The position numbers were made by a program, and so were the translations under genes. Source: Hormiphora californensis (taxonomy: Eukaryota; Animalia; Ctenophora). Taken from it: a stretch of 64,000 nucleotides of DNA. Shown here one piece after another: positions 9,589-27,131 of the stretch. Each line of letters opens with the position of its first letter. The first letter of the stretch is position 1. Under the pieces are notes generated by a model. That model was given only the letters and a program-made list of their open reading frames with translations. It was not told the DNA's origin and searched no databases. The DNA is taken from contig CM035361.1 in assembly GCA_020137815.1 (NCBI GenBank), positions 1,922,001 to 1,986,000 of the forward strand. Reading direction: 5' to 3'.

Positions 9589-12500
9589 ATGTCTGCCAGT
9601 AAAAACTGTATACCTAGGTAATTTATCAATTTAATTCATTAATCAATTTTATAAAAACGGTATACCTAGCTTATGTAGTTAGAATAGTTTGTTATCACAT
9701 CACATCTAATCAATTTGATTGCCGCCTACTAGATGTTGAACTGTTCAGGCGACTCATCTACTTTTTATGAAACATAAACAGTTTGTTATTTACCTAAACT
9801 ATTATTTCTATTTCAGTGGATCATGGCGAACCTTTATCATTTCTACAACGATCCCATTCGTAGGAGGTCTTTTCTTCATAGTGATATGGAGGCTTATCAG
9901 TAAGTTAGAACACCATATTTGGGCATCACGTGACATGCATAACAACCTGCAATGTTCATTATATTTCTAGAAATAAAATGCGAAAAGGTGTTTTGCTCTA
10001 GATTGATTGTTCATCTTTCAAGTTTAATATGAACCAATCCATCATTCACATTTTTAACCCCATACTCCATCTCAGGAAGCATTTTTTTATACGCAAGACA
10101 AAAGGGAACGAAGAGCAATGGCTCGACACGAGATTTTTGTATAGCCCGGATATCACGGCGTGTCTTCAAGCTCCAACGGAAGGTAATTATATCATCAGAA
10201 TTTGATATTCGGAAATTACCAAGTGAAGAAAGTTGCAAGCTTTTAAAAGTATTATGCTTCACGTATTCAGATGTGGTAACTAAAGTTGGTTAACACTATA
10301 AAACTTCTATTTATAGGTCAAGGAGTTTGCGGAGGACTTGAGTTATCCAAAGACGCGGAAGGGCCGACTAATGACATGGTTAACCATGTTATTTACATTT
10401 GTAGCAATTATTCTGTATCTCGTCGACACTAGCAAGTATGTTAATTCCAACTTAAAAGTTCCTTTTTGGCTGCTTTGTGGGTTGCTATTATTTTCCCACT
10501 AGATACTATTCTAAGATACATACTCAGTCCAATGAGACCACTAAGCTTTCCACTAAGCTACTCACTTTTTCCAGGAGTTTAGAGCGGTGTGTCGATAGAA
10601 CCGATCCTGCTGTAATTTTAGACTCTATATGTAACCTATTTTTCCTATGGAGATTCACTGTAATGGTAGGTGTATTTAAAATAGAGATTAAACAAGTTTC
10701 TTTTTAATAGAGATTTTAATAGAATGTATTATTTGTTACATTCAATTTATAGTAAAACAAAATGTTTTCTATTTACCTAAACCAATCTCAATCTCTCGAT
10801 TTCAGTGTATAGTGGCCAAAGACAAACTGAGTTTTTGGGTTGAACTAAATTCCTTGATAGACTTTTGTACCATACCCCCCGCTTTTTTAACCCTCTACCT
10901 TGGCACCACGTGGCTAGGTGAGTTCTGACTTCTAATCGAACAAACTCTTTAGAGTTCTGATACGAGCTCCGACTTCCAACTATTATCTTCATCCAAGATC
11001 GTCATCCAATATAGCACGGCCTCATTAAATGCAGTTTTTATTACATACATCACAACAGATTAATGAATCCAACCCATCTCTCTCTAGGTCTAAGATTTAT
11101 CCGTGCATTACGGTTGCAGTACATTGGCGAAGATTTTGCCTCCGTAAAGCTGATATCCTCCCACAAGATGCTAAACCTCAGTCGGACACTTTGTCAGTTT
11201 GTCAGCTTTTGGTTAACTGCTGGTGGCCTTTATTTTTTGGTAAGAGTCTTGGTTAGCTGAACATATTATAATTGGAAGTAATAATCTTAACAAGCAAGTG
11301 AAGTAATTTTAAACCGGAATATATTCCTAATAATCAAAACATATATGTTTTGATTATTAGAGCTAATTGGACATGGGAGATCAAGAAGTTCTCAATTTGA
11401 AAACTCCGATTGTATGATGATTTCCTCAAAATAATCCCACGTGTCATTTCAGGTTGACAACATGTCAGCACAGACGGCCAGCTGCAACAAGCCCATTTGT
11501 GGGCTAAACTTCTGGGAGTCCCTCTACTTTCTCTTTATTACTCTGTCAACTATCGGGTACGGGGATAAACACCCGATCAGCTTGGAAAGTCAGATCATTG
11601 TAATATTTATCATCGTAGTTGGATTGGTAAGTTGCGTGGGAAAGAAGTTGAAATACAAAAAAGAAGAGAGAGGGAGGGGAGAGAGAGAGAGGGGGGGAGA
11701 GAGAGAGAGAGAGAGATACTTGAAAGCAATTAATTTTGCAGAAACGGTTTAATTGCACAACATCCGGAAATTTGTCTCATTATACGTCATTTATCTTTCA
11801 AACCGCAAATACATCGATTTACTCGTCACAATTTTACCACAAATTACATAACTATGGTACCCTCTATTACGAAACATCATACGTCACACATAAGTTATTA
11901 AGTTACGACATCATCACTTATTGATTTACATCCCCCTCCCTATCTAGACATCATTTGCATCATTGATGCCGGCTCTGGTTGAACTGTCCCAGAAACCAGC
12001 TGGATGGTTGGGAGTGTATGATGACAGCAAGTCTAGGTGAAAATAGTGTGACAATCTTAGCTATGTGTGAGAGAAATCTTTACTAGCTATTATGTGTGTG
12101 ACGTGAGAGCATTGCTATCATGTGTGAGAGAGCAATCTTACGGCTATTTGTGTACAAGCACTCTTCCAGCTTTGCTAACCACTTTCGTGTGCTAAAGTTA
12201 GTGTACTGTGGGGAGCTACATTTTGTGTGATGTTCGACTGACGACAAACTAGACTACCAACAATATACCCAATTTGTACATTGACATTCCCCTTTGAATC
12301 TGATCCAACTTACTGAACGACTGACCCAGAGCATTAGAGCAACATTATATCTGATTAATCTGACAGTTACTGACAGTTACTGTACGGACATTACTCTGAC
12401 TTCAGGCAATTTTACCGACAGTAGGACCAGAGATCTTAGCTCTATTAGGACAGCCACCCCCACATACACGCGACTATGACGACACTAAATCTCGGTATGT

Positions 12501-15500
12501 GACACCGATGAAACCGGACTATGAAGAAGACAATTGACAATTACTTTTTAAGCTAGCACTTGAAAAACGACACAACTATTATAGCTATAATTATATAGCA
12601 CCTAAAAGCCCAACAAAGCATTGTTTTCTTCTGGGCACCGAAATGACCATTGTATGCCATACTGTACAGTAACATTCCATTTTCAGTCACGTGATAGTAT
12701 GCGGGTACATAACAACAAGTACCGTCAGCAACTTTATGAGAGACTTCCTTCATCCGGAAAATGAAAATCAAGAAACAACAGCTGTATTTCTTAATCCGTG
12801 AGTCATATAATGCTATCAATCATTGGACAAAAATTGAAGAATAACCTAAACAATCTTCATTTGACTAAACATGCTCAATTTCAATTTGTATTCAGATTTG
12901 GAGCTCCATAATTTACATTTGAAATCATACTTCCTAATCAAAATGTATACATCTGAATATTTTTAGGACGCCCCCACCAGAAGAGTTAATGAATTTGATG
13001 CACCGGCACTTTTATCGATGTCAATATCTCCAGGGTAGTCCGCTGGGGTCAGGGGACCTCCAACGGTGTAAGGTAACAAACTAACAGGAAATGAGACTGA
13101 TCGACATCGTGTCATAGCCTAAATAGGGTGAACTGTGACAGTTTCAAAATAATTGAATTTCGTGTTGCAACTTCTCGTAAAATTCTTTCTTTTGTTTCAG
13201 TGCGATACGGCAAAGGCGTGTTTAGTGATAGCAAACAAGCACAGTCATGAACCGGATGCCGAGGATGCAGCTAACATACTCAGGTGAGAATCTTAAGACA
13301 AGCTAATTAACTAATTAATTAATTAGTTCAATTCTGCTTCTAGCTAGATGTAGAAGTTAGTATCCTGGTAGAGTGCTCGATCCGGGGATGCGGAGAGCTT
13401 AACTATTGTGGCAAGTGAAAACAAGTTTTTTACACAATCAACAAATGTTTCACGCGAATGCGATCGTCAGGATTAAAAATGTAAACTTGTTTACTCGTTA
13501 ACAGTCCTCTGCTCCTTCATAAAGTTGGATGTTTCATGAGTTTAACGGCTAGATACTTCCTCTTGTGCGGACACTTGTTTAACAGTTCGCTCTTCCTGTT
13601 TATCAGGTCCTTCCCTCTGAGGATGTGGTACTTTTCCGCCAGACACAGATTACAGGTTATATTACCAGGTTGATATGTGCGAGCTTTGGCTAATAATCGC
13701 CATGTTATGTCATGTCTTATGTCTCTGTCCTTTAGTCTCCAGACTAGTTTGGACAGTTCTGTCTCGTTTTTGTATCTGTCGTGTCTGAATGTAGTTTTGT
13801 GTGTGTTCAGTCTGGATTTAAACGTCCCCTCGGCCATTCCGACGTATTTTGACTCCTTGTTCCCGTGCTTCACAGTAGCCTCGTACACTACCCCTGTTGT
13901 GGCAAGTGAAAACAAGTTTTTTACACAATCAACAAATGTTTCACGCGGGGTAGTGTACGAGGCTACTGTGAAGCACGGGAACAAGGAGTCAAAATACGTC
14001 GGAATGGCCGAGGGGACGTTTAAATCCAGACTGAACACACACAAAACTACATTCAGACACGACAGATACAAAAACGAGACAGAACTGTCCAAACTAGTCT
14101 GGAGACTAAAGGACAGAGACATAAGACATGACATAACATGGCGATTATTAGCCAAAGCTCGCACATATCAACCTGGTAATATAACCTGTAATCTGTGTCT
14201 GGCGGAAAAGTACCACATCCTCAGAGGGAAGGACCTGATAAACAGGAAGAGCGAACTGTTAAACAAGTGTCCGCACAAGAGGAAGTATCTAGCCGTTAAA
14301 CTCATGAAACATCCAACTTTATGAAGGAGCAGAGGACTGTTAACGAGTAAACAAGTTTACATTTTTAATCCTGACGATCGCATTCGCGTGAAACATTTGT
14401 TGATTGTGTAAAAAACTTGTTTTCACTTGCCACAATAGTTCAATTCTGCTTCCAAGTTTACCTTCTCAATCTTTGATTTGAATTAAATTCCCCTGTTTGT
14501 AAAACATCCTAACAATTCATCATCTCTCCTCAGAGTTATTTCGATAAAGAATTTCCGGGCGTCAGTCAGAGTTATAATTCAGATTTTAAATTACCACAAC
14601 GAGGAACATCTTTTTAATGTTCCTGATTGGTCGAAAATGTACGGCGATGAGGTCATCTGCATTAATGAGGTAAGTTAAGTTCGTAATTCGGCAAAGCGTC
14701 AATTGCTTCAAGGAGTTTTATTTCCATTTGAAACTGAGAATACTTCAACTCCTCTACACACCATCAGGCATCAACTAATTAGGTAGCTAACCTACAACAA
14801 TGTATTTCAGTTGAAGTTGGGTCTACTCGGTAAGAGTTGTTTGTGTCCTGGGTTCAGCACAATGGTGGCTAATCTCATCATGATGAGCTCCTTCCAACCG
14901 TGCAATTACAACGTTAGTCAATCAACAAAACTAGCTTCTCATTGACCCTTTGACTTTCCATGACAACACATGTTTTAAATTGACAAAATATAACTAACTA
15001 TCCTATTCGATAGAACCCGGGAAATGACGTAAGAGATCACTGGCAATACGAATATGGTTATGGTGCTTCAAACGAACTCTATACTGGGCAAATGAGTAGG
15101 TGGGTCAAATATATCAAGTCTCGTACAATTTAGCTTATTTTGAAATAGGCTTCATCTTAAATTTTTTTGGTTTTTATGATGTATCCTTTAACTAGACTAC
15201 CAAAAAGTCATTTAATATTTCACGTCTCTCTCTCCCCCCAGTGATTTTGTTGGAATGACATTCCCCACGGTCGCCGAGATCTGTCTTATCAAACTTCACA
15301 TCCTGCTTATTGGGGTGGAGGTGGAAACCAGTGTGGATGGCTCCGGAATTCTATTCAACCCAGCCCCGAGTATTTTCCTGTTTTCCGAGAACAGCAAGGG
15401 AATCTTCATCGCTCAAAACCCGCAAGCAGTGAAAAGTGCTGCATTTTATTGTTACCATTGCCACGAGTACACGAACAGTAATGAGATATCAAAGTGCAAC

Positions 15501-18500
15501 TGCGACAAAAGTGAGTACACATTATACAATGTTCTGATTAAATAATGCCTGCTCTTTTTTGACAAATAAAAAACAGAAGGGGCTGACCATTAGTAAAACT
15601 AAAGACATGACCAACGAATGACTTGAGTCACCTGACACTTTAAATGAACAATTCAACGAACAATGACCGAATATTGGAAGGTATTTTCAACTCTTCTCTA
15701 CTCCTCAGCGAAGTACATTCCTACTCATGGGGTTGGGGTGAACAACTCCGCGTCGAGTCCCGATGGTCTCTATAGGACGGTGTATGGTGCGGAGATGTCA
15801 GAATTTACTACCGCTCAACCGCGACCTGGCGTCGAGGTAAAATATTGTTGATAAAATATTAGACAATAAATCAGTTAATTGATTAATTAACTGATTAATT
15901 AGCTTACGGAAATTATAATAACTCATTTAAATAGCGAGATTATGATACCAAAGCACAAGTTAACCGTTTGAAAATTGAAACTCCAAAGGTTGCGAAATAC
16001 GAACCGTACTGGAAGACACTTACGAAAGATGAGCGTTCAAGATATGATCAGAAACTAACCCTCGATGGGACGGGCGCCTATCATTGGAGGGAACCCTGTG
16101 CATTGGATGACGTCACCATGGTCAGTGTTGTCATAGCAACCTGATTCTGAAGGGAATTCTGATTTCCAAATGTATAGAAATATTAACATTTCATGCGAGT
16201 CTACTAATTTTTATCTTTTTAGACGAAAGAAGACGTTGCAACGTTAACTGATCATATCATTGTTTGTGTCTTTGGAGACCTACAATCGCCCACCGTTGGC
16301 CTTCGGAACTTGGTAGGTCAAACAAGTACAATCCTATATGTAGTCCGATTTCATTTTACAAAATTGATAAGTTAAAAATGATACAAACCGTACATTATTC
16401 AAATTTGATTTCTATTCAAATCTCCCTCCAGCTGTTACCGCTTCGGAGTAGTAATCTGCCGATGATGGAGGTGAAGAAGGTCCTCTTGCTCGGTCAAAAA
16501 GACTACATCGAAAAGGAGTGGAAGGATCTAAACGATTTCCAAGACGTATACTTCATGGAGGTACAGTAGATGCAATGCTGTTATAATCAATTGTTAGCCT
16601 GATCGGTGTCGAAGAAAAGATAAATTTCACATTTGAAGACCCTTCACATTTTCACAAATACCCTTTACATTTGGAGACCTTTTAGTCTCTCATATTTTCA
16701 CAATTTATTGACCACTGCACTGAACACATTATATATGTCAACTGATTTTACAATGCAATATTAGGTGACATCGCAGTTAGGAGAAGCGACAGCACCACAA
16801 TCAAGATTCATGGTATTAAACTGCACATTAAACTCACTTTTAAATGCACTGTTTCATCGACATTTTTCGGCATATAAGAACCACATTATTTTCGGTCAAA
16901 ATTTTAATAAGTTTGTCCAATGTCCATTGTCCATTGAGTAACACAGTCTTTAAGAAGTGTTCAAAAGTTTAGAAATTCAGTTATGTAATGACTGGTACAA
17001 TAACATATATTGTTTCAGGGATCACCTATGCGAAGGGAGGATGTGATATCAGCAGGAGTTCAGAACTGCCTTATGTGTCTCATTCTATCATCGGCCCTTC
17101 AGGGGAAGGCCACCGATCCTAATCTAGTTGATAAGGAAACTATCCTCTCGTTTTTACAGGTATAGTTCATACAATTTTAGTTTTCGGTGAAAGATATTTC
17201 AAGGGAAGATCACCGATAAACGGCTGAAAATACACAAAACCTAAAGTGGGAACTTGTCACAATTCCGATAACCCATGAAACTAACAATCATCTTCTTAGA
17301 TAAAAGGTTGTGGAGGTACAGAACTTATAAACCCGCGATCTTTCAAGTATACACTGAATGAAAAACCAAAAAGGAATCGCATGCAAGTGCCAATCATTTC
17401 GGAAATTGGTCAGTACTAACTCCAATTAATTACATTTTAATTAGAAGTCCCAATTTCATTACATTGCTTTTTGATCTAACTAATAACCACTGTGGAGTAA
17501 TATCATCCTTTAGGGGAACTCCAACGATCAGTTCGAATAATATCCCCTCTTTCTTCTAGTAAACGACTCCAACGTTCAATTTATGGAGAAATCGAAAGAT
17601 TCTAGCCAGCGGGGTCTCCATATGGCCCTGCCTTTTACCCGGGGCCAAGCGTTTATTGTATCCGTTCTGGATGCTATTCTATCACTGGTAAATGTCCCGA
17701 GCCACGGTGTACCATTATCCACACACACCAGTTACCATGGTAACCACATCAACACAGTTACCATGGCAACAATACAGTGTATGGGTAATGGTAACCGTGG
17801 TCAGTTCCCCCCTTTATTGTACACCCCTTCCTCCCCCCGTCCTATCGGTAAACAGTTCAAGACGAAAACGTGCATTTTATGGTTCTGGACCGTGTAGCGG
17901 GTGATTTACACGCGACCGCCTGGTCTCCGCCATTTGTAGCAGGCCAAGCGTTCGTTGTGTCCCTTCTAGATGCCATTTTGTCCTTGGTGAGATGCGTGTG
18001 TGAGATGTGAGAAGAACAGATGTGTGAATGTGAGAAAACTCGGGAAAGTGAGAACTATAATTCGTGAATGTTGTGAAATTGTGAAAATGTGAGAATACTC
18101 TCGGGCTGTGTATGTGTATGAATTGCAACGGCCGGTGCTGCACTCGGGTGCTGAACCTATAGAAGTAGATCCCTGGGACTTGCCGCTTTTAGGTCACTAG
18201 TATTGTAGTGACTCACTGCAATACAGGGGAAGTGCTATAACACTGGCGTGCGTCTATGAGAGAAGGTCGAAAAATCGAAATTGTGTGTGTGTGCATGTGA
18301 GAGGGATGACGAGTGACGATTGATCAAATTATCGATGTGAATAAAGTGTTTTTGGGCCGTGTTTTTATTTTTTTACTGATCCGGGAAATCTGCTGTACCT
18401 TTTTATGTGAAAATGAAAGTGAAACTAATATTGACAGAATGTTCGAGGTCTAGACTGTCTGTGGCAAAACTGTTAGGATTTTCATAGTCTTGCTGAAATT

Positions 18501-21500
18501 TTGAGCTGCAAACACACCACCGTAACCCCCTCTACACCAATCAAAATGTAGGCACTATTTCTAAAACAACGTAAACCTCATTTCAGACGTTTTATAATGA
18601 GAAACTGATGAGGATTATCCGAACGCTTATTACGGGGGTCGATAGTCACTCGCAGGACCCAGATGATTCATACACTGATTTCGGTAATTGATACACATCT
18701 ACTTCTTTATGTAGCTCACATTCCATTTTATTTCATAAAAGCGCTCTTTGAGGGCTCGGCAGAGTAACTTCGGCTGCACCTAACTGACGAGTTATTAAGA
18801 TTTTACTATTTTTACAACAACTGCTCCTTCATAATAACTTGATTCACATTTCTCAATAGACGACTGTGGGATTGCAGCCGGTTTAAATCGATTTCGACCT
18901 TGGCTTCGAACGCGGATGTCTTGTCGGGTGGCTCAAATTTCTTTAGCAGATGAACGGTTTTCCGGCAAACGGGTAAGCTTTATTTGCAAACAAATATTTC
19001 ATCTCTATTGCCTCGACCCGTGGTCCCCTGCCAGAGCATTGGCCTGACTCATGGGCCCCTGTCAGAGAATTGGCCTGACCCGTGGGCCCCAACCGCGGCT
19101 CGGCATCATTATTATATTTCCATCTTCGTGTCCCTATAGGTGTACGGCGAACTATTTGAAATGCTACTGAAGGAACACTCAATGCTCGCATTGGGCCTGT
19201 ATCGCTGCTACAAAAAGTCACACAAGGGATCAAATCGACGGCCAATGGGGGGTCCTGAGTAAGTTTAGAAAACACATCACGTTAGCTTTGAAGATATATT
19301 ATGTTGTCTGCCATCAGCATACCCCGTTTTTGAATCTCGCGACAGAGTGCTCAGATCAGCTCCAGCAATAACGTGTCGTTTCAGGAGGGACAGAAGTCGC
19401 GGGTACCGAGATAACGAAGATCGGTATGTCAACACAGCGCCCCCTTATGATGCCAAGCTGAGACCAAGCGATAAGGTACAACTAGTTCACACCTTTCTTT
19501 CACATCCACTTGGCTAGATGGGACTATCCTCTACTGGATCCAGCATGTTCACAAACAGAACATGCGCCTAGATAAAAACCCGTTAGTAAACATACCTCGA
19601 TCTCGTTTTCCAGGTTTTTGTCCTGGCTCAATCGGAGATGGAGCATAATTTCCCCTTGGAGAACTACGACATAAACGATGATAGCAGTTCGTCAGATAAT
19701 GAGTTCCCCGGGTACTCATCGCCACCACAACTTACAGGTACTAGTGGGAGTACGGGACACATAGTCTTCCTTACTTTACACAAGTTCATGTGTTGTCACG
19801 TTGCTTTATTGCATTCAATGGGTTATATAACGTCTTGTTTAATTGATACTCGTGCTTTTGCTATAGGCTATTATATATTTTGCTAATGTTATACTCGTGT
19901 CTAATTGACACCCCTCATTATCATACGCATGTAGAGTGTAGACCATCATCTCGCTTGTTTGTGTACAACTATATAAATTGGAGATCTCTGCCAACAATGT
20001 CAGCAGTTTAATGTGAGGCTGTAATCGCCATTAGATAGAAAGAGAGCGATTATAGATAGTGAGATAAGATAGCGAAATAGGATAGATAGGGTAGCGACTG
20101 GCTATTTGAAACAGTTTTTCACTTTTTTCCCTTGCCTGCCCACAAATCAAGTCGAACCCAAATTTTTTTGACCTTGTGTTACCGAGACAGTCCCTGGGTA
20201 GTTTTTTGGGTGGTTGGAGATGTCTCATTTTGTCTTCCGGGGTCAGGGTCACGTGATATCTATCCAAATTTGGTGTTTCAATTTACCCGCCTCGGTCTGC
20301 TAATTTGAAACACCCGTATCTCCCTCAATTTCTCCACGAAACCAAAATTTTTGACATTGAATAGTTAGAAAAGGGTTGTGCAGAGCCATTCCATGTCTGA
20401 AATCTGAATTTTGTTGAACGTGTTTGGTGCAATGACCTTTTCCAAAAACTGTTTCAAATTAGCAGGAAAACAGTTTTTGCCTCATATTCGGCCAACTTTT
20501 GGCGGAAATGACTCAAATCATAGTTTATATCCTGCCTCATGCTCATATTGAACAATAAAAATTTCGACAATCCAATCGGAGAAAATTGTTTCAAATAGCC
20601 CTCCTCAGTGTTTCAAGTTACCAGACTCTCTTCACTGTGCTACAGCACACACACGACACCAATCAGAGAGCAAATAACGCGCATGTGTTTCAAATAACCA
20701 GAGCACGTGTTTCAAGTTATCAGACACTGTTTCAAGTTAGCAGGCGTTTCAAATTGCCAGTCGCTACCCTATATAGAGTTAATGAGCAAGAGAGATAACA
20801 TTTCCAGATGATTGAGAGCAGTTCATTAGCTCTCAACAGTTACAGTCCGTACGTGTGCAGTAGTTGATCCAATTTATAATGTGTCTATAATAACTGTCTA
20901 ATGTAGCTCACTATAATACCAACACAGTAGTCCACGAAAGTTATTAAATATATTGAGCTGAAAACCACAAAGACACATTCACTGATCAGATCTATAAACT
21001 CTGGTCGCATTCAGATCGCTAGTATGTACTAAGAACATATTATAATAAATCGTTTAATTGCTACTTAGATACTGTGCTACTGAACATAATATAATTGCCG
21101 GAAGAAAAAAAGTAAATCAAAACGTCTGTGATCGCTAAAAAACAAAACTATCAATGCTTCGCTACTAAAGATGGCTAGATCAATGCGATATGTTGTAGAG
21201 CTAGAGTGCGGAAACTATTGAACAGCTACTGATGGAATTCCTACGAAAGAGAGGGATTCTCTGCAGGGAAAGCACATTTCTGCGGCAAATGCTACAAACA
21301 GCTAGGGGAGCATCATTCTACAGCTAAATATCGGACTCAGCACTATTGCCACACAACTCTACAGCTAAATATTGGACACAGCAGCAGCCCTTGATCCAGA
21401 TCAACCAATATATCCCTCTCTCTCCCTCTCTAGGACAGAACCAAAAGCGCCGGATGTCTAAAAACAACTCTCGAGGAGCACCTCCCTCACCCCGGTTACC

Positions 21501-25601: not shown

Positions 25602-25754
25602 CACCCGCACACGTGTTCCTTATTTCCCCGCCCGAAGGCCTTTTTTAATTCAAAAATTTCGTCAAAAATCGACGATTTTGCCTCTCGGCTGTCAGAAACC
25701 TGAAACTTGTTTTGGCTCTCACGCCCTTGATTCTCGACCAATTTCGACAAATCC

Positions 25755-27131
25755 AATCCTGAAGATCTTGGCAGCTACCGCCCGATCAGTAATCTACCAT
25801 TTGTGTCAAAGATCATTGAGAAATGTGTATCTTTACAGTTGACCGAGCATTTAGAGAGCCATCAGTTGCTATCGGGAGTTCAATCTGCTTACCGCAAACA
25901 CCATAGTTGTGAGACTGCAACACTAAAAGTTGTTAACGATCTTCTGCTTCTGCTAGATAAGAAGTCAAAGGCTGTGCTACTACTGCTGGACCTATCTGCA
26001 GCATTTGACACAGTTCAACACAGCAAACTACTAAAGAAGATGCGGACGGACTACGGAATAGAAGATACTGCTCTCGCCTGGTTCAAATCATATCTCACAG
26101 GTCGGTCCACCTCGGTACAAATTGGAGATGCACGATCAAGATCGATAGAGGTGGATATTGGTGTGCCGCAGGGTAGCATCCTAGGGCCTATTCTCTTCAT
26201 TATGTATACCAAAGAGCTCCAGTCGATTGCGGAAAAGCATGGTCTTAACATTCACCTCTTCGCTGACGACACCCAGATCTATACTAGTTTTAGGCCGGAA
26301 ACCTTTGACTTTGTTGTGGATAAATTACAAAATTGTATCAGTGACATCAAGCAATGGATGAAGCAAAACTACCTCAAGCTAAATGCCAGTAAAACGGAAA
26401 TTCTGATACTCAACCACAAAGCCGACCGCACTCCTGGGCCAACTGGATTAGTGATTGAAAAAGACGAAAGTCCAATTGTACAGTCTACGGAAATCGAATC
26501 AACGACAAGTGCCCGTAATCTCGGTATTTGGCTCGATCCCACCCTCTCAATGGCAAGCCATATCTCGAAAATTGTCCAAGCATGTAATATGCAACTTCTG
26601 AATCTGTGGAGGATAGCTAGAAAACTTCCCAGGCAACTGAAAATCAAGCTAGTGCATTCGTTAATACACTCTCGCCTAGACTATGGAAATGCCCTACTCT
26701 ATGGTGCCACAGAATCTGATTTAAACCGCCTCCAAAAGGTCCAAAACAGTGCTGTACGGTTCGTCTATGGAACAAGAAAGAGGAGAGGAGTGACCCAGAT
26801 GCGGAAAGACCTACACTTCCTTCCGATCAAAAGCAGAATCATCTTCAAAATCTGCTTACTAACATACAAATCCATCAATGGAATGGCTCCCCCCTACATC
26901 TCCAACCTCATCCCCCTCCGGAAGCCAAAGGTCAAGGTAGTCAGGGCAGACGAGGATAGCACACTCCTCCACAAACCATACACACACAAGTACACAGCCA
27001 CTAGTAGAGCCTTTAGTATTAGTGCACCTAAATTGTGGAATGAGTTACCGAAAACCCTGCGAGAAAGTGAATCTGTCGATGTGTTTAAACAGCAACTTAA
27101 AACTTACCTGTTTAAGAAAGCTTATTGCTAA
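25755..27131 (+). CDS. Reverse transcriptase (LINE ORF2 C-terminal part)
   Basis: YRPISNLPFVSK, HSCETA, LDLSAAFDTV, GVPQGSILGP, FADDTQIY, HSRLDYGN; uninterrupted frame. Confidence 0.92.
   Translation, partial: NPEDLGSYRPISNLPFVSKIIEKCVSLQLTEHLESHQLLSGVQSAYRKHHSCETATLKVVNDLLLLLDKKSKAVLLLLDLSAAFDTVQHSKLLKKMRTDYGIEDTALAWFKSYLTGRSTSVQIGDARSRSIEVDIGVPQGSILGPILFIMYTKELQSIAEKHGLNIHLFADDTQIYTSFRPETFDFVVDKLQNCISDIKQWMKQNYLKLNASKTEILILNHKADRTPGPTGLVIEKDESPIVQSTEIESTTSARNLGIWLDPTLSMASHISKIVQACNMQLLNLWRIARKLPRQLKIKLVHSLIHSRLDYGNALLYGATESDLNRLQKVQNSAVRFVYGTRKRRGVTQMRKDLHFLPIKSRIIFKICLLTYKSINGMAPPYISNLIPLRKPKVKVVRADEDSTLLHKPYTHKYTATSRAFSISAPKLWNELPKTLRESESVDVFKQQLKTYLFKKAYC

What the first reader, a model, noticed from the sequence alone, without database searches (positions are those of the whole stretch)
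17560..17986. Duplicated, mutually exclusive exons swap the calcium-bowl segment of a Slo/BK channel
Seen: two homologous exons (128 and 131 nt, both phase 1->0, both with AG/GT and open frames) encode NDSNVQFM-EKSKDSSQRGLHMA-LPFTRGQAFIVSVLDAILSL and QDENVHFM-VLDRVAGDLHATAW-SPPFVAGQAFVVSLLDAILSL. The flanks are conserved at protein level with many synonymous changes, while the bowl loop differs completely. Including both shifts the frame. Known: in Slo1 this segment is the Ca2+ bowl (NVQFLDQDDDDDPD...PFACGTAFAVSVLDSL). Inference: the gene makes two channels with different ligand sensors at the bowl. I know of no Slo gene with a mutually exclusive bowl exon.
Basis: partly seen in the sequence, partly recalled or inferred. 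Interest (0 to 1): 0.92.

Follow-up and report, generated by a model that had tools for sequence, protein, structure and literature searches.

The report
Alternative bowl exons, comb-jelly BK channel
A comb-jelly potassium-channel gene of the BK/Slo1 type has two interchangeable copies of the exon that forms the "calcium bowl" in other animals; the pair is old and conserved, but neither copy encodes a true calcium bowl and only the first copy was seen in RNA for this species.

Summary
Exon A (17560-17687, 128 nt) and exon B (17856-17986, 131 nt) are homologous (BLASTP E 4e-11). Both have AG/GT splice sites and the same phase. Using one keeps the reading frame; using both or neither gives an early stop.

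The gene (about 9815-19740, + strand) is a Slo1/BK-type channel of a ctenophore.

RNA contigs from two studies join 17408>17560 and 17687>18587, so A is included and B is skipped. No RNA covered B.

B is nevertheless not a relic:
- B-type exons occur in at least four other ctenophore sequences.
- Their conservation (about 75-80%) stops at the splice sites (7-14% outside), although silent sites are saturated.
- The Bolinopsis microptera RefSeq models X1/X2 carry B spliced in frame, and X3/X4 carry A.

A second Slo paralogue has its own pair of bowl exons.

The "sensor swap" reading is not supported as stated. Neither exon keeps both Ca2+-ligand aspartates: D895 becomes Lys in A and Arg in B, and D897 is kept only in some species' B.

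I class it as a new variant of a known kind, tandem mutually exclusive exons in BK genes. It is visible in public annotation, but I found no paper describing it. Its function is unknown.

The parts
9815..19740 (+). Slo1/BK-type K+ channel gene (about 25 exons) that holds the exon pair
   Evidence: tblastn of the related full-length proteins P0002 and the L013 ORF maps exons from 9815 to about 19740. There is a BK_channel_a (PF03493) hit at window 14808-14900. The orthologue scores 687 bits to human BK.
17300..17408 (+). Constitutive upstream exon (...NRMQVPIISEI), ending in phase 1
   Evidence: tblastn. RNA junctions 17159>17300 (X2) and 17408>17560 (X4).
17560..17687 (+). Exon A, 128 nt, the default bowl-position exon (VNDSNVQFMEKSKDSSQRGLHMALPFTRGQAFIVSVLDAILSL)
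   Evidence: RNA contigs from runs X3 and X4 (two studies) cover it and join it to 18587. Its protein sequence is 100% identical in Bolinopsis, Mnemiopsis and L013.
17688..17855 (+). Intron of 168 nt between A and B. Positions 17701-17801 fold into a 101-nt hairpin, leaving 13 + 54 nt outside it.
   Evidence: RNA fold -54.3 kcal/mol, z -5.6, 0 of 200 shuffles as good. Only one weak tandem match elsewhere in the genome. No Rfam family.
17856..17986 (+). Exon B, 131 nt, the alternative bowl-position exon (VQDENVHFMVLDRVAGDLHATAWSPPFVAGQAFVVSLLDAILSL)
   Evidence: B-type exons occur in P0008, P0009, P0010, P0014 and Bolinopsis X1/X2. No RNA depth here in 4 runs of contigs.
17987..18586 (+). Intron of 600 nt after B. 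The RNA-supported A-to-downstream intron 17688-18586 (899 nt) contains B.
   Evidence: Junction 17687>18587 in X3 and X4.
18587..18683 (+). Constitutive downstream exon (TFYNEKLMRIIRTLITG...)
   Evidence: tblastn. RNA junctions 17687>18587 and 18683>18860.

Best explanation
Exons A and B are a real, ancient pair of mutually exclusive exons, made by tandem exon duplication, in a ctenophore Slo1/BK-type potassium-channel gene.

What they encode. Each encodes the same piece of the second RCK domain. In BK channels this piece is the strand NVQF, the Ca2+-bowl loop, and the following helix PF..G.AF.VS.LD..LS.

How the choice works. The upstream exon ends in phase 1 and both exons are 2 mod 3. So an mRNA must contain exactly one of them. 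Both together, or neither, gives an immediate stop codon, and such an mRNA is presumably lost to nonsense-mediated decay (inferred). A is the default form. B is a minor or cell-type-restricted form (inferred).

A second safeguard may exist. In a lobate relative the A-B intron is only about 33 nt, too short to splice. In this genome it is 168 nt, but 101 nt of it fold into a hairpin. That the hairpin matters for splicing is speculative.

What changes in the protein. The swap replaces a one-residue-shorter, basic loop (A: EKSKDSSQRG, Lys at the place of ligand D895) with an acidic-hydrophobic loop (B: VLD....SPP). In this species and two relatives the B loop has the canonical bowl length. Neither loop is a canonical Ca2+ bowl. 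The most likely effect (inferred, untested) is a change in how RCK2 packs against the neighbouring RCK1 at the gating-ring assembly interface. That would alter gating or ion sensitivity.
For: - Sequence and frame logic.
- A included and B skipped in RNA contigs of two independent studies: junctions 17408>17560 and 17687>18587.
- Six metatranscript contigs and all transcript-derived proteins found carry A or its paralogue's A'.
- B-type exons occur in four further sequences. Pairwise identity is 80% (first 10 aa) and 75.5% (last 22 aa) inside the exon, against 7% and 14% in the in-frame flanks. Every copy keeps the V codon made by AG|TT and the V (GTN) of the donor.
- Silent sites between this species and the lobate orthologue are saturated: third-position identity is 0.31-0.53 and dS is undefined. 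Unconstrained DNA would therefore not be recognisable.
- Bolinopsis microptera RefSeq isoforms XP_063692571/572 (X1, X2) have PIISEI|B|TFYNEKLM. X3 and X4 have A.
- The paralogue at G000:C12:0.75 Mb has its own pair (A' and C-type). Bolinopsis models X1-3, 8 and 9 of that paralogue carry C.
- Exon tree: the B clade has support 98/100, and B+C fall on one side with 91/95.
- The P0010 ORF reads the upstream exon, then exon A in the +1 frame without gaps, then exon B. This gives an A-B intron of 33 nt.
- B's splice sites look like those of RNA-supported introns of the same gene.
Against: - No RNA covers exon B in this species, and no 17408>17856 or 17986>18587 junction was seen. Only assembled contigs of four metatranscriptomes could be laid, and contigs drop rare forms.
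- No spliced B-type fragment exists among 5.8 billion predicted proteins apart from the RefSeq models. I could not see what RNA evidence lies behind those models.
- This species' B sits on a long branch (1.14), and its polypyrimidine tract is separated from the AG by GGTAAACAG. It may be weaker here than in lobates.
- The functional consequence is entirely inferred. Both AlphaFold models failed (pLDDT about 30).
Confidence: 0.8

Rival explanations
1. In this species exon B is an unused relic. The duplicate is functional in lobate ctenophores but is silent or decaying here, and the gene makes only the A channel.
For: - No depth on 17856-17986 in four RNA runs.
- B of this genome is the most divergent B together with P0014: 52-63% identity to the others, branch length 1.14.
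- The A-B intron has gained a 101-nt palindromic insert relative to the 33-nt intron of a relative.
- There is a purine-rich stretch between the pyrimidine tract and the AG.
Against: - The 43-codon frame is open, with canonical AG and GT and correct phase.
- The flank residues typical of B (VQD.NV.FMVLD, SPPF, GQAF.VS.LD) are kept although silent sites are saturated.
- Contigs cannot show absence.
Confidence: 0.12
2. Exon B acts mainly as a regulatory 'poison' element. When it is included together with A it shifts the frame, so the message is destroyed and channel output falls. On this view it does not make a second protein isoform.
For: A+B gives a stop 14 codons into B. The A-B intron of 168 nt is long enough to be spliced in this species (introns of this gene are about 90-900 nt).
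Against: - Selection acts on B's own reading frame at the protein level, with boundaries at the splice sites. A poison exon needs no such constraint.
- The relatives' annotated models carry B alone, in frame.
- In a relative the A-B intron is 33 nt, so A+B cannot be spliced together.
- No A+B transcript was seen.
Confidence: 0.04
3. The similarity is a chance or assembly artefact, and there is a single bowl exon.
For: None found.
Against: - BLASTP E 4e-11.
- The same two exon types are found in independent assemblies and in Bolinopsis.
- The arrangement is repeated in the paralogue.
Confidence: 0.01

Closest known systems
Slo1/KCNMA1 mutually exclusive alternative exon 9 (Slo1_9a; Soom et al. 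2008, cited in PMC11758846) and the tandem-duplicate alternative exons of fly and worm slo genes (Fodor and Aldrich 2009, cited in PMC3342872)
   Same: It is a tandem exon duplication inside a BK gene, with one copy used per mRNA, giving channel isoforms. This gene also has such a pair at the S6-RCK1 linker (11948-12036 / 12406-12494).
   Different: The pair studied here replaces the bowl strand-loop-helix of RCK2. I found no mutually exclusive pair described at that position. The lineage is Ctenophora.
Mammalian Kcnma1 exon 23b cassette next to the Ca2+ bowl (PMC10834251)
   Same: Alternative splicing alters the bowl region of RCK2 and is tissue-specific.
   Different: Exon 23b is a cassette exon that is included or skipped beside an intact acidic bowl. 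Here the whole bowl-position exon is exchanged, and neither version is acidic enough to be a bowl.
Slo3 (KCNU1), the bowl-less, pH-gated paralogue of Slo1 (solved gating ring 4hpf)
   Same: It is a Slo1-like channel whose bowl loop has lost the Ca2+ ligands.
   Different: Slo3 is a separate vertebrate gene. Here the degenerate loops are splice alternatives of one gene. The ctenophore protein is closer to Slo1 (687 bits) than to Slo3 (366 bits, over a solved construct that holds the gating ring only).
Steric-hindrance mutually exclusive exons, for example alpha-tropomyosin exons 2/3 (my own knowledge, not checked here)
   Same: An intron between the two alternatives that is too short to be spliced would enforce exclusivity. 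The relative's A-B intron is about 33 nt.
   Different: In this genome the intron is 168 nt. Only if the 101-nt hairpin forms is the effective distance short. That is untested.

Membership tests
Slo1/BK (KCNMA1-type) channel alpha subunit | Domain architecture: voltage-gated pore module plus two RCK domains (Ion_trans, Ion_trans_2, BK_channel_a, Slo-like_RCK, Slowpoke_C) | tested here: met
   Pfam scan of the orthologue's two isoforms P0098 and P0101 finds all five families above cut-off. BK_channel_a hits the window itself at 14808-14900.
Slo1/BK (KCNMA1-type) channel alpha subunit | Closer to Slo1 than to Slo3 or Slo2 over the full length | tested here: met
   The L013 ORF scores 687 bits to human BK, 686 to Aplysia BK, 366 to Slo3 (gating-ring construct only) and 133 to Slo2.2.
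Slo1/BK (KCNMA1-type) channel alpha subunit | K+ selectivity filter GYG | tested here: met
   LSTIGYGD is encoded at window 11447-11629.
Slo1/BK (KCNMA1-type) channel alpha subunit | Ca2+ bowl: acidic run with side-chain ligands D895 and D897 (human numbering) | tested here: not met
   In exon A, D895 is K and D897 is a gap. In this species' exon B, D895 is R and D897 is A. In Bolinopsis B, D895 is R and D897 is kept. Only the third paralogue keeps an acidic DNEDEPDIE stretch.
Slo1/BK (KCNMA1-type) channel alpha subunit | Mg2+ site E374/E399 and RCK1 Ca2+ site D367/E535 | tested here: inconclusive
   Read from the HMMER alignment: E374 is T and E399 is Q (Mg2+ site lost); D367 is E, and E535, S533 and M513 are kept (RCK1 site possibly kept).
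Slo1/BK (KCNMA1-type) channel alpha subunit | Activation by voltage and intracellular Ca2+ | not testable with these tools
   Needs electrophysiology. Ca2+-sensitive K+ currents and three KCNMA1 genes are reported for Mnemiopsis muscle (PMC13749725).
Mutually exclusive exon pair from tandem exon duplication | Adjacent homologous exons of the same phase, each with canonical splice sites | tested here: met
Mutually exclusive exon pair from tandem exon duplication | Exactly one copy keeps the frame; both or none breaks it | tested here: met
   Local translation of the four exon combinations.
Mutually exclusive exon pair from tandem exon duplication | Transcripts with copy 1 only | tested here: met
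   Junctions 17408>17560 and 17687>18587 in runs of two studies. Transcript contigs L011, L013 and L014 of this gene's orthologues carry A (L009, L010 and L012, of the paralogue's orthologues, carry A').
Mutually exclusive exon pair from tandem exon duplication | Transcripts with copy 2 only, in this species | tested here: inconclusive
   None seen, but only contigs of four metatranscriptomes could be laid. In Bolinopsis the RefSeq models X1/X2 carry B alone; the RNA support of those models was not visible to me.
Mutually exclusive exon pair from tandem exon duplication | Both copies kept by selection in other species | tested here: met
   A is 100% identical in protein across species. B conservation is bounded by the splice sites in 5 sequences although silent sites are saturated.
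Steric-hindrance type of mutual exclusion | Intron between the two copies too short to splice | tested here: inconclusive
   The intron is about 33 nt in the genome behind P0010 (inferred from its ORF). It is 168 nt here, or 67 nt outside the hairpin.
Docking-site/selector RNA pairing (Dscam type) | Conserved competing base-pairing between one docking site and a selector beside each copy | tested here: inconclusive
   Only low-complexity CACACA/GTGTGT complements were found.

The most novel reading that the evidence does not exclude
Exon choice toggles a cation site in RCK2. On this reading, the B loop rebuilds a divalent-cation (or other ion) site: it has the canonical bowl length in this species and two relatives, a conserved acidic residue at the place of D894, and D897 kept in some species. 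The A loop instead puts a lysine where the ligand D895 sits and is ligand-independent. Ctenophores would then achieve by splicing what vertebrates do with separate genes (Slo1 versus Slo3). The pair would also predate the duplication that gave the two ctenophore Slo paralogues.
Probability: 0.15. Interest if true: 0.85.

Novelty: new variant of a known kind. Interest (0 to 1): 0.55.

Why it matters
The Ca2+ bowl is the best-studied ligand site of BK channels. Here a natural, conserved pair of alternative exons replaces exactly this strand-loop-helix in one of the earliest-branching animal lineages. The same arrangement occurs in two paralogous genes.

That offers a ready-made experiment on what the bowl loop does beyond binding Ca2+, namely at the gating-ring assembly interface. 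It also adds a further case of BK genes evolving alternative exons by tandem duplication. It further shows that ctenophore 'KCNMA1' genes cannot be assumed to be Ca2+-bowl channels.

It is not a new kind of mechanism. The isoforms are already present, without comment, in RefSeq models.

Tried and rejected
I therefore could not fetch the relatives' genomic DNA. dN/dS of B between species, intron lengths other than P0010's, and covariation of the hairpin could not be computed.
2. AlphaFold2 of the Bolinopsis B and A isoforms with an 18-row alignment gave unusable models (mean pLDDT 30.8 and 29.9). No fold search was run. The structural placement rests on sequence alignment to solved BK channels.
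3. Exon B alone finds nothing meaningful in the PDB. Its homology to the bowl segment is shown through exon A and through the full-length B isoform.
4. Searches for spliced B-type fragments found none beyond RefSeq. The single metagenome scan returned only A or A' transcripts.
5. Rfam finds nothing in 17400-18700. The hairpin is not a high-copy element.
6. The bacterial promoter/terminator scan is irrelevant to this eukaryotic gene.
7. I first thought that the paralogue's C-type exon had lost its donor. It has not: the donor lies 21 nt further on (...GDRE|GTA), as in the Bolinopsis models.
8. The alternative that B and C arose independently, one in each gene, is not rejected (p-AU 0.18).
Exons were searched by reference, and full-length work used public proteins of relatives. 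The only joining was a local translation to test the frame.

Full report
**Observation.**
- Exon A is 17560-17687 (128 nt) and exon B is 17856-17986 (131 nt).
- Each is preceded by AG and followed by GT.
- They translate to NDSNVQFMEKSKDSSQRGLHMALPFTRGQAFIVSVLDAILSL and QDENVHFMVLDRVAGDLHATAWSPPFVAGQAFVVSLLDAILSL.
- They are homologous: 57% identity in MAFFT, BLASTP E 4e-11, and 79% identity over the last 47 nt.
- In the 28 flank codons, 9 differ only synonymously (dN 0.23, dS 1.2). The duplication is therefore old and the flanks are under purifying selection.
- A local translation shows that upstream+A+downstream and upstream+B+downstream are open. A+B stops 14 codons into B, and skipping both stops after 3 codons.

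Exons were searched by reference.

**The gene.** Exon A alone matches the Ca2+-bowl segment of solved BK channels (Aplysia 894-935, human 884-925). tblastn of related full-length proteins maps about 25 exons between 9815 and 19740 on the + strand. The orthologous transcript L013 scores 687 bits to human BK, 366 to the Slo3 gating-ring construct and 133 to Slo2.2. The orthologue's two isoforms have the complete Slo Pfam architecture.

**The organism.** The L013 protein clusters at 90% identity or more with 'slowpoke-like' isoforms X1-X4 of Bolinopsis microptera and with two Mnemiopsis leidyi proteins. The organism is therefore a ctenophore. G000 has 110.69 Mb in 45 contigs. This fits the published Hormiphora californensis assembly of 110 Mb in 44 scaffolds (PMC8527503). 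The species name is my inference and was not tested. The genome has three Slo loci on contig 12, matching the three KCNMA1 genes reported for Mnemiopsis (PMC13749725).

**RNA evidence.** Four metatranscriptome runs (two studies) hold near-identical contigs.
- They show junctions 17408>17560 (X4) and 17687>18587 (X3 and X4), so A is included and B is skipped.
- Depth over B is zero.
- Six JGI metatranscript contigs carry A or the paralogue's A'. So do all the transcript-derived proteins found.

A is therefore the dominant form. Contigs drop rare variants, so this does not show that B is unused.

**Is B a functional exon?** A profile of A+B searched against 1.84 billion proteins found both types as open reading frames called on genomic contigs.
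- Type B occurs in P0008, P0009 (and cluster mates), P0010 and P0014.
- The five B sequences share VQD.NV.FMVL(D/E) and SPPF(A/V)(K/A)GQ...VS.LD..(L/M)S(L/M).
- Pairwise identity is 80% over the first 10 residues and 75.5% over the last 22.
- In the same reading frame just outside the exon, identity is 7% upstream and 14% downstream.
- All copies keep the codons created by AG|TT and by the GT donor.
- Between this species and the lobate orthologue, third codon positions are only 31-53% identical and dS is undefined by NG86. Unconstrained sequence would not be recognisable.

B is therefore kept by selection on its protein sequence. The Bolinopsis RefSeq models X1 and X2 read PIISEI|VQDTNVEFMVLDRGDSDQSLGTASPPFAKGQAFIVSVLDSILSL|TFYNEKLM, and X3 and X4 carry A. 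From my knowledge of NCBI's pipeline, alternative variants are built from transcript evidence. I could not see that evidence. No other spliced B-type fragment exists in the 5.8-billion protein set.

**The same design occurs twice.** The paralogue at G000:C12:0.743-0.764 Mb (minus strand) has an A' exon (750918-751043). About 1 kb downstream it has a third type, C (749752-749886). C's donor lies 21 nt further on (...GDRE|GTA), and a partial tandem copy of C's 5' half is also present. Bolinopsis models X1-3, 8 and 9 of that paralogue carry C, and the others carry A'. The third paralogue keeps an acidic DNEDEPDIE stretch.

In a tree of 21 bowl exons, B is a clade (98/100) and B+C lie on one side of a branch (91/95). 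This suggests that the exon duplication preceded the gene duplication. The alternative is not rejected (p-AU 0.18), and 43 columns with long branches are weak data.

**How exclusivity is enforced.**
- Frame: this is shown.
- Steric hindrance in a relative: P0010 is one open frame through the upstream exon, an 88-nt intron, exon A read in the +1 frame (ungapped, score 103), ten codons, and exon B. This gives an A-B intron of 33 nt. Introns of this gene are about 90-900 nt. A 33-nt intron is almost certainly unspliceable; that rests on general knowledge of spliceosome size.
- The hairpin: in this genome the intron is 168 nt, but 17701-17801 fold into a hairpin (-54.3 kcal/mol, z -5.6). This leaves 13 + 54 nt outside. 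The hairpin is not a common repeat and matches no Rfam family. That it keeps the effective distance short is speculation.
- B's acceptor has a strong pyrimidine tract, but it is separated from the AG by GGTAAACAG. Its donor TTG|GTGAGA is good.

**What is swapped.** Alignment to human BK uses D895 and D897 as the side-chain ligands and Q889 and D892 as the main-chain ligands; these assignments are my recollection of the structures.
- Exon A: Q889 kept, D892 becomes E, D895 becomes K, D897 is a gap. The loop is one residue shorter.
- Bolinopsis B aligns without gaps: Q889 becomes E, D892 becomes V, D894 kept, D895 becomes R, D897 kept.
- This species' B: D895 becomes R and D897 becomes A.

Neither exon is a canonical bowl. 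Elsewhere in the protein the Mg2+ ligands are lost (E374 is T, E399 is Q). The RCK1 site is largely kept (D367 is E; E535, S533 and M513 kept), and so is the Asn equivalent to N449.

I therefore read the pair as two versions of a degenerate bowl loop at the RCK2-RCK1 assembly interface. A is basic and extremely conserved. B is acidic-hydrophobic with a fast-evolving loop. The effect on gating or ion sensitivity is unknown. Both AlphaFold models were unusable.

**Comparison with the known.** Mutually exclusive tandem exons in BK genes are known. Examples are Slo1 alternative exon 9 (cited in PMC11758846) and the fly and mammal cases reviewed by Fodor and Aldrich (cited in PMC3342872). A cassette exon beside the bowl is known in mouse (PMC10834251). 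I found no paper on an exchange of the bowl exon itself, nor on ctenophore Slo splicing. The library does not hold most subscription journals, and Fodor and Aldrich 2009 could not be read.

**Verdict.** The mutually exclusive design is well supported, and its use in this species is probable but unproven. The 'two ligand sensors' reading is unsupported. It is a new variant of a known kind and of moderate interest.

Noticed in passing
window 11948-12036 and 12406-12494 (+): This is a second tandem pair of homologous exons in the same gene, both 89 nt with AG/GT, encoding the S6-RCK1 linker (FASLMPALVELSQKPAGWLGVYDDSKS versus AILPTVGPEILALLGQPPPHTRDYDDTKS). Bolinopsis isoforms X1-X4 are the 2x2 combinations of this pair with the bowl pair, and the two Mnemiopsis models differ only here. 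It parallels the vertebrate Slo1 alternative exon 9.
   Followed up: partly
window 17701-17801: A 101-nt near-perfect hairpin fills most of the A-B intron (-54.3 kcal/mol, z -5.6). Its core palindrome is GTTACCATGGTAAC. The only other match in the genome is a short tandem array at G000:C5:5154356-5154443.
   Followed up: partly
G000:C12:749752-751043 (minus strand; loci L017, L018, L025): The paralogous Slo gene has its own pair of bowl exons (A' and a Ser-rich C type whose donor lies 21 nt further on). It also has a recent tandem copy of about 100 bp covering the intron end and the 5' half of exon C, which ends in a stop.
   Followed up: partly
G000:C12:3159761-3159916 (locus L022/L028): The third, more divergent Slo paralogue keeps an acidic bowl-like stretch (DNEDEPDIELHLTMKFAQG). 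An intron is placed differently there. It is the only one of the three genes with a plausible Ca2+ bowl.
   Followed up: no
window 15709-15838 and 19737: RNA contigs support an exon at 15709-15838 that the related proteins did not align to. In two runs the contigs leave the window sequence at 19737 and continue with unlike sequence. This suggests a further downstream or alternative 3' exon. Related transcripts P0002 and P0091 also differ at the C-terminus.
   Followed up: no
window 25731-27128 (+): A long open frame (466 aa) has reverse-transcriptase-like motifs, probably a non-LTR retrotransposon copy.
   Followed up: no
window about 2390-2500: A run of N (an assembly gap) lies inside GA/CT-rich simple repeats.
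   Followed up: no
proteins P0025 and P0054: In genomic ORFs of other animals, a canonical acidic bowl exon is followed directly by a degenerate second copy of itself. This may be an assembly artefact or a local duplication. The 5' boundary of the bowl exon (V|NDSNV) appears shared between ctenophores and other animals.
   Followed up: no
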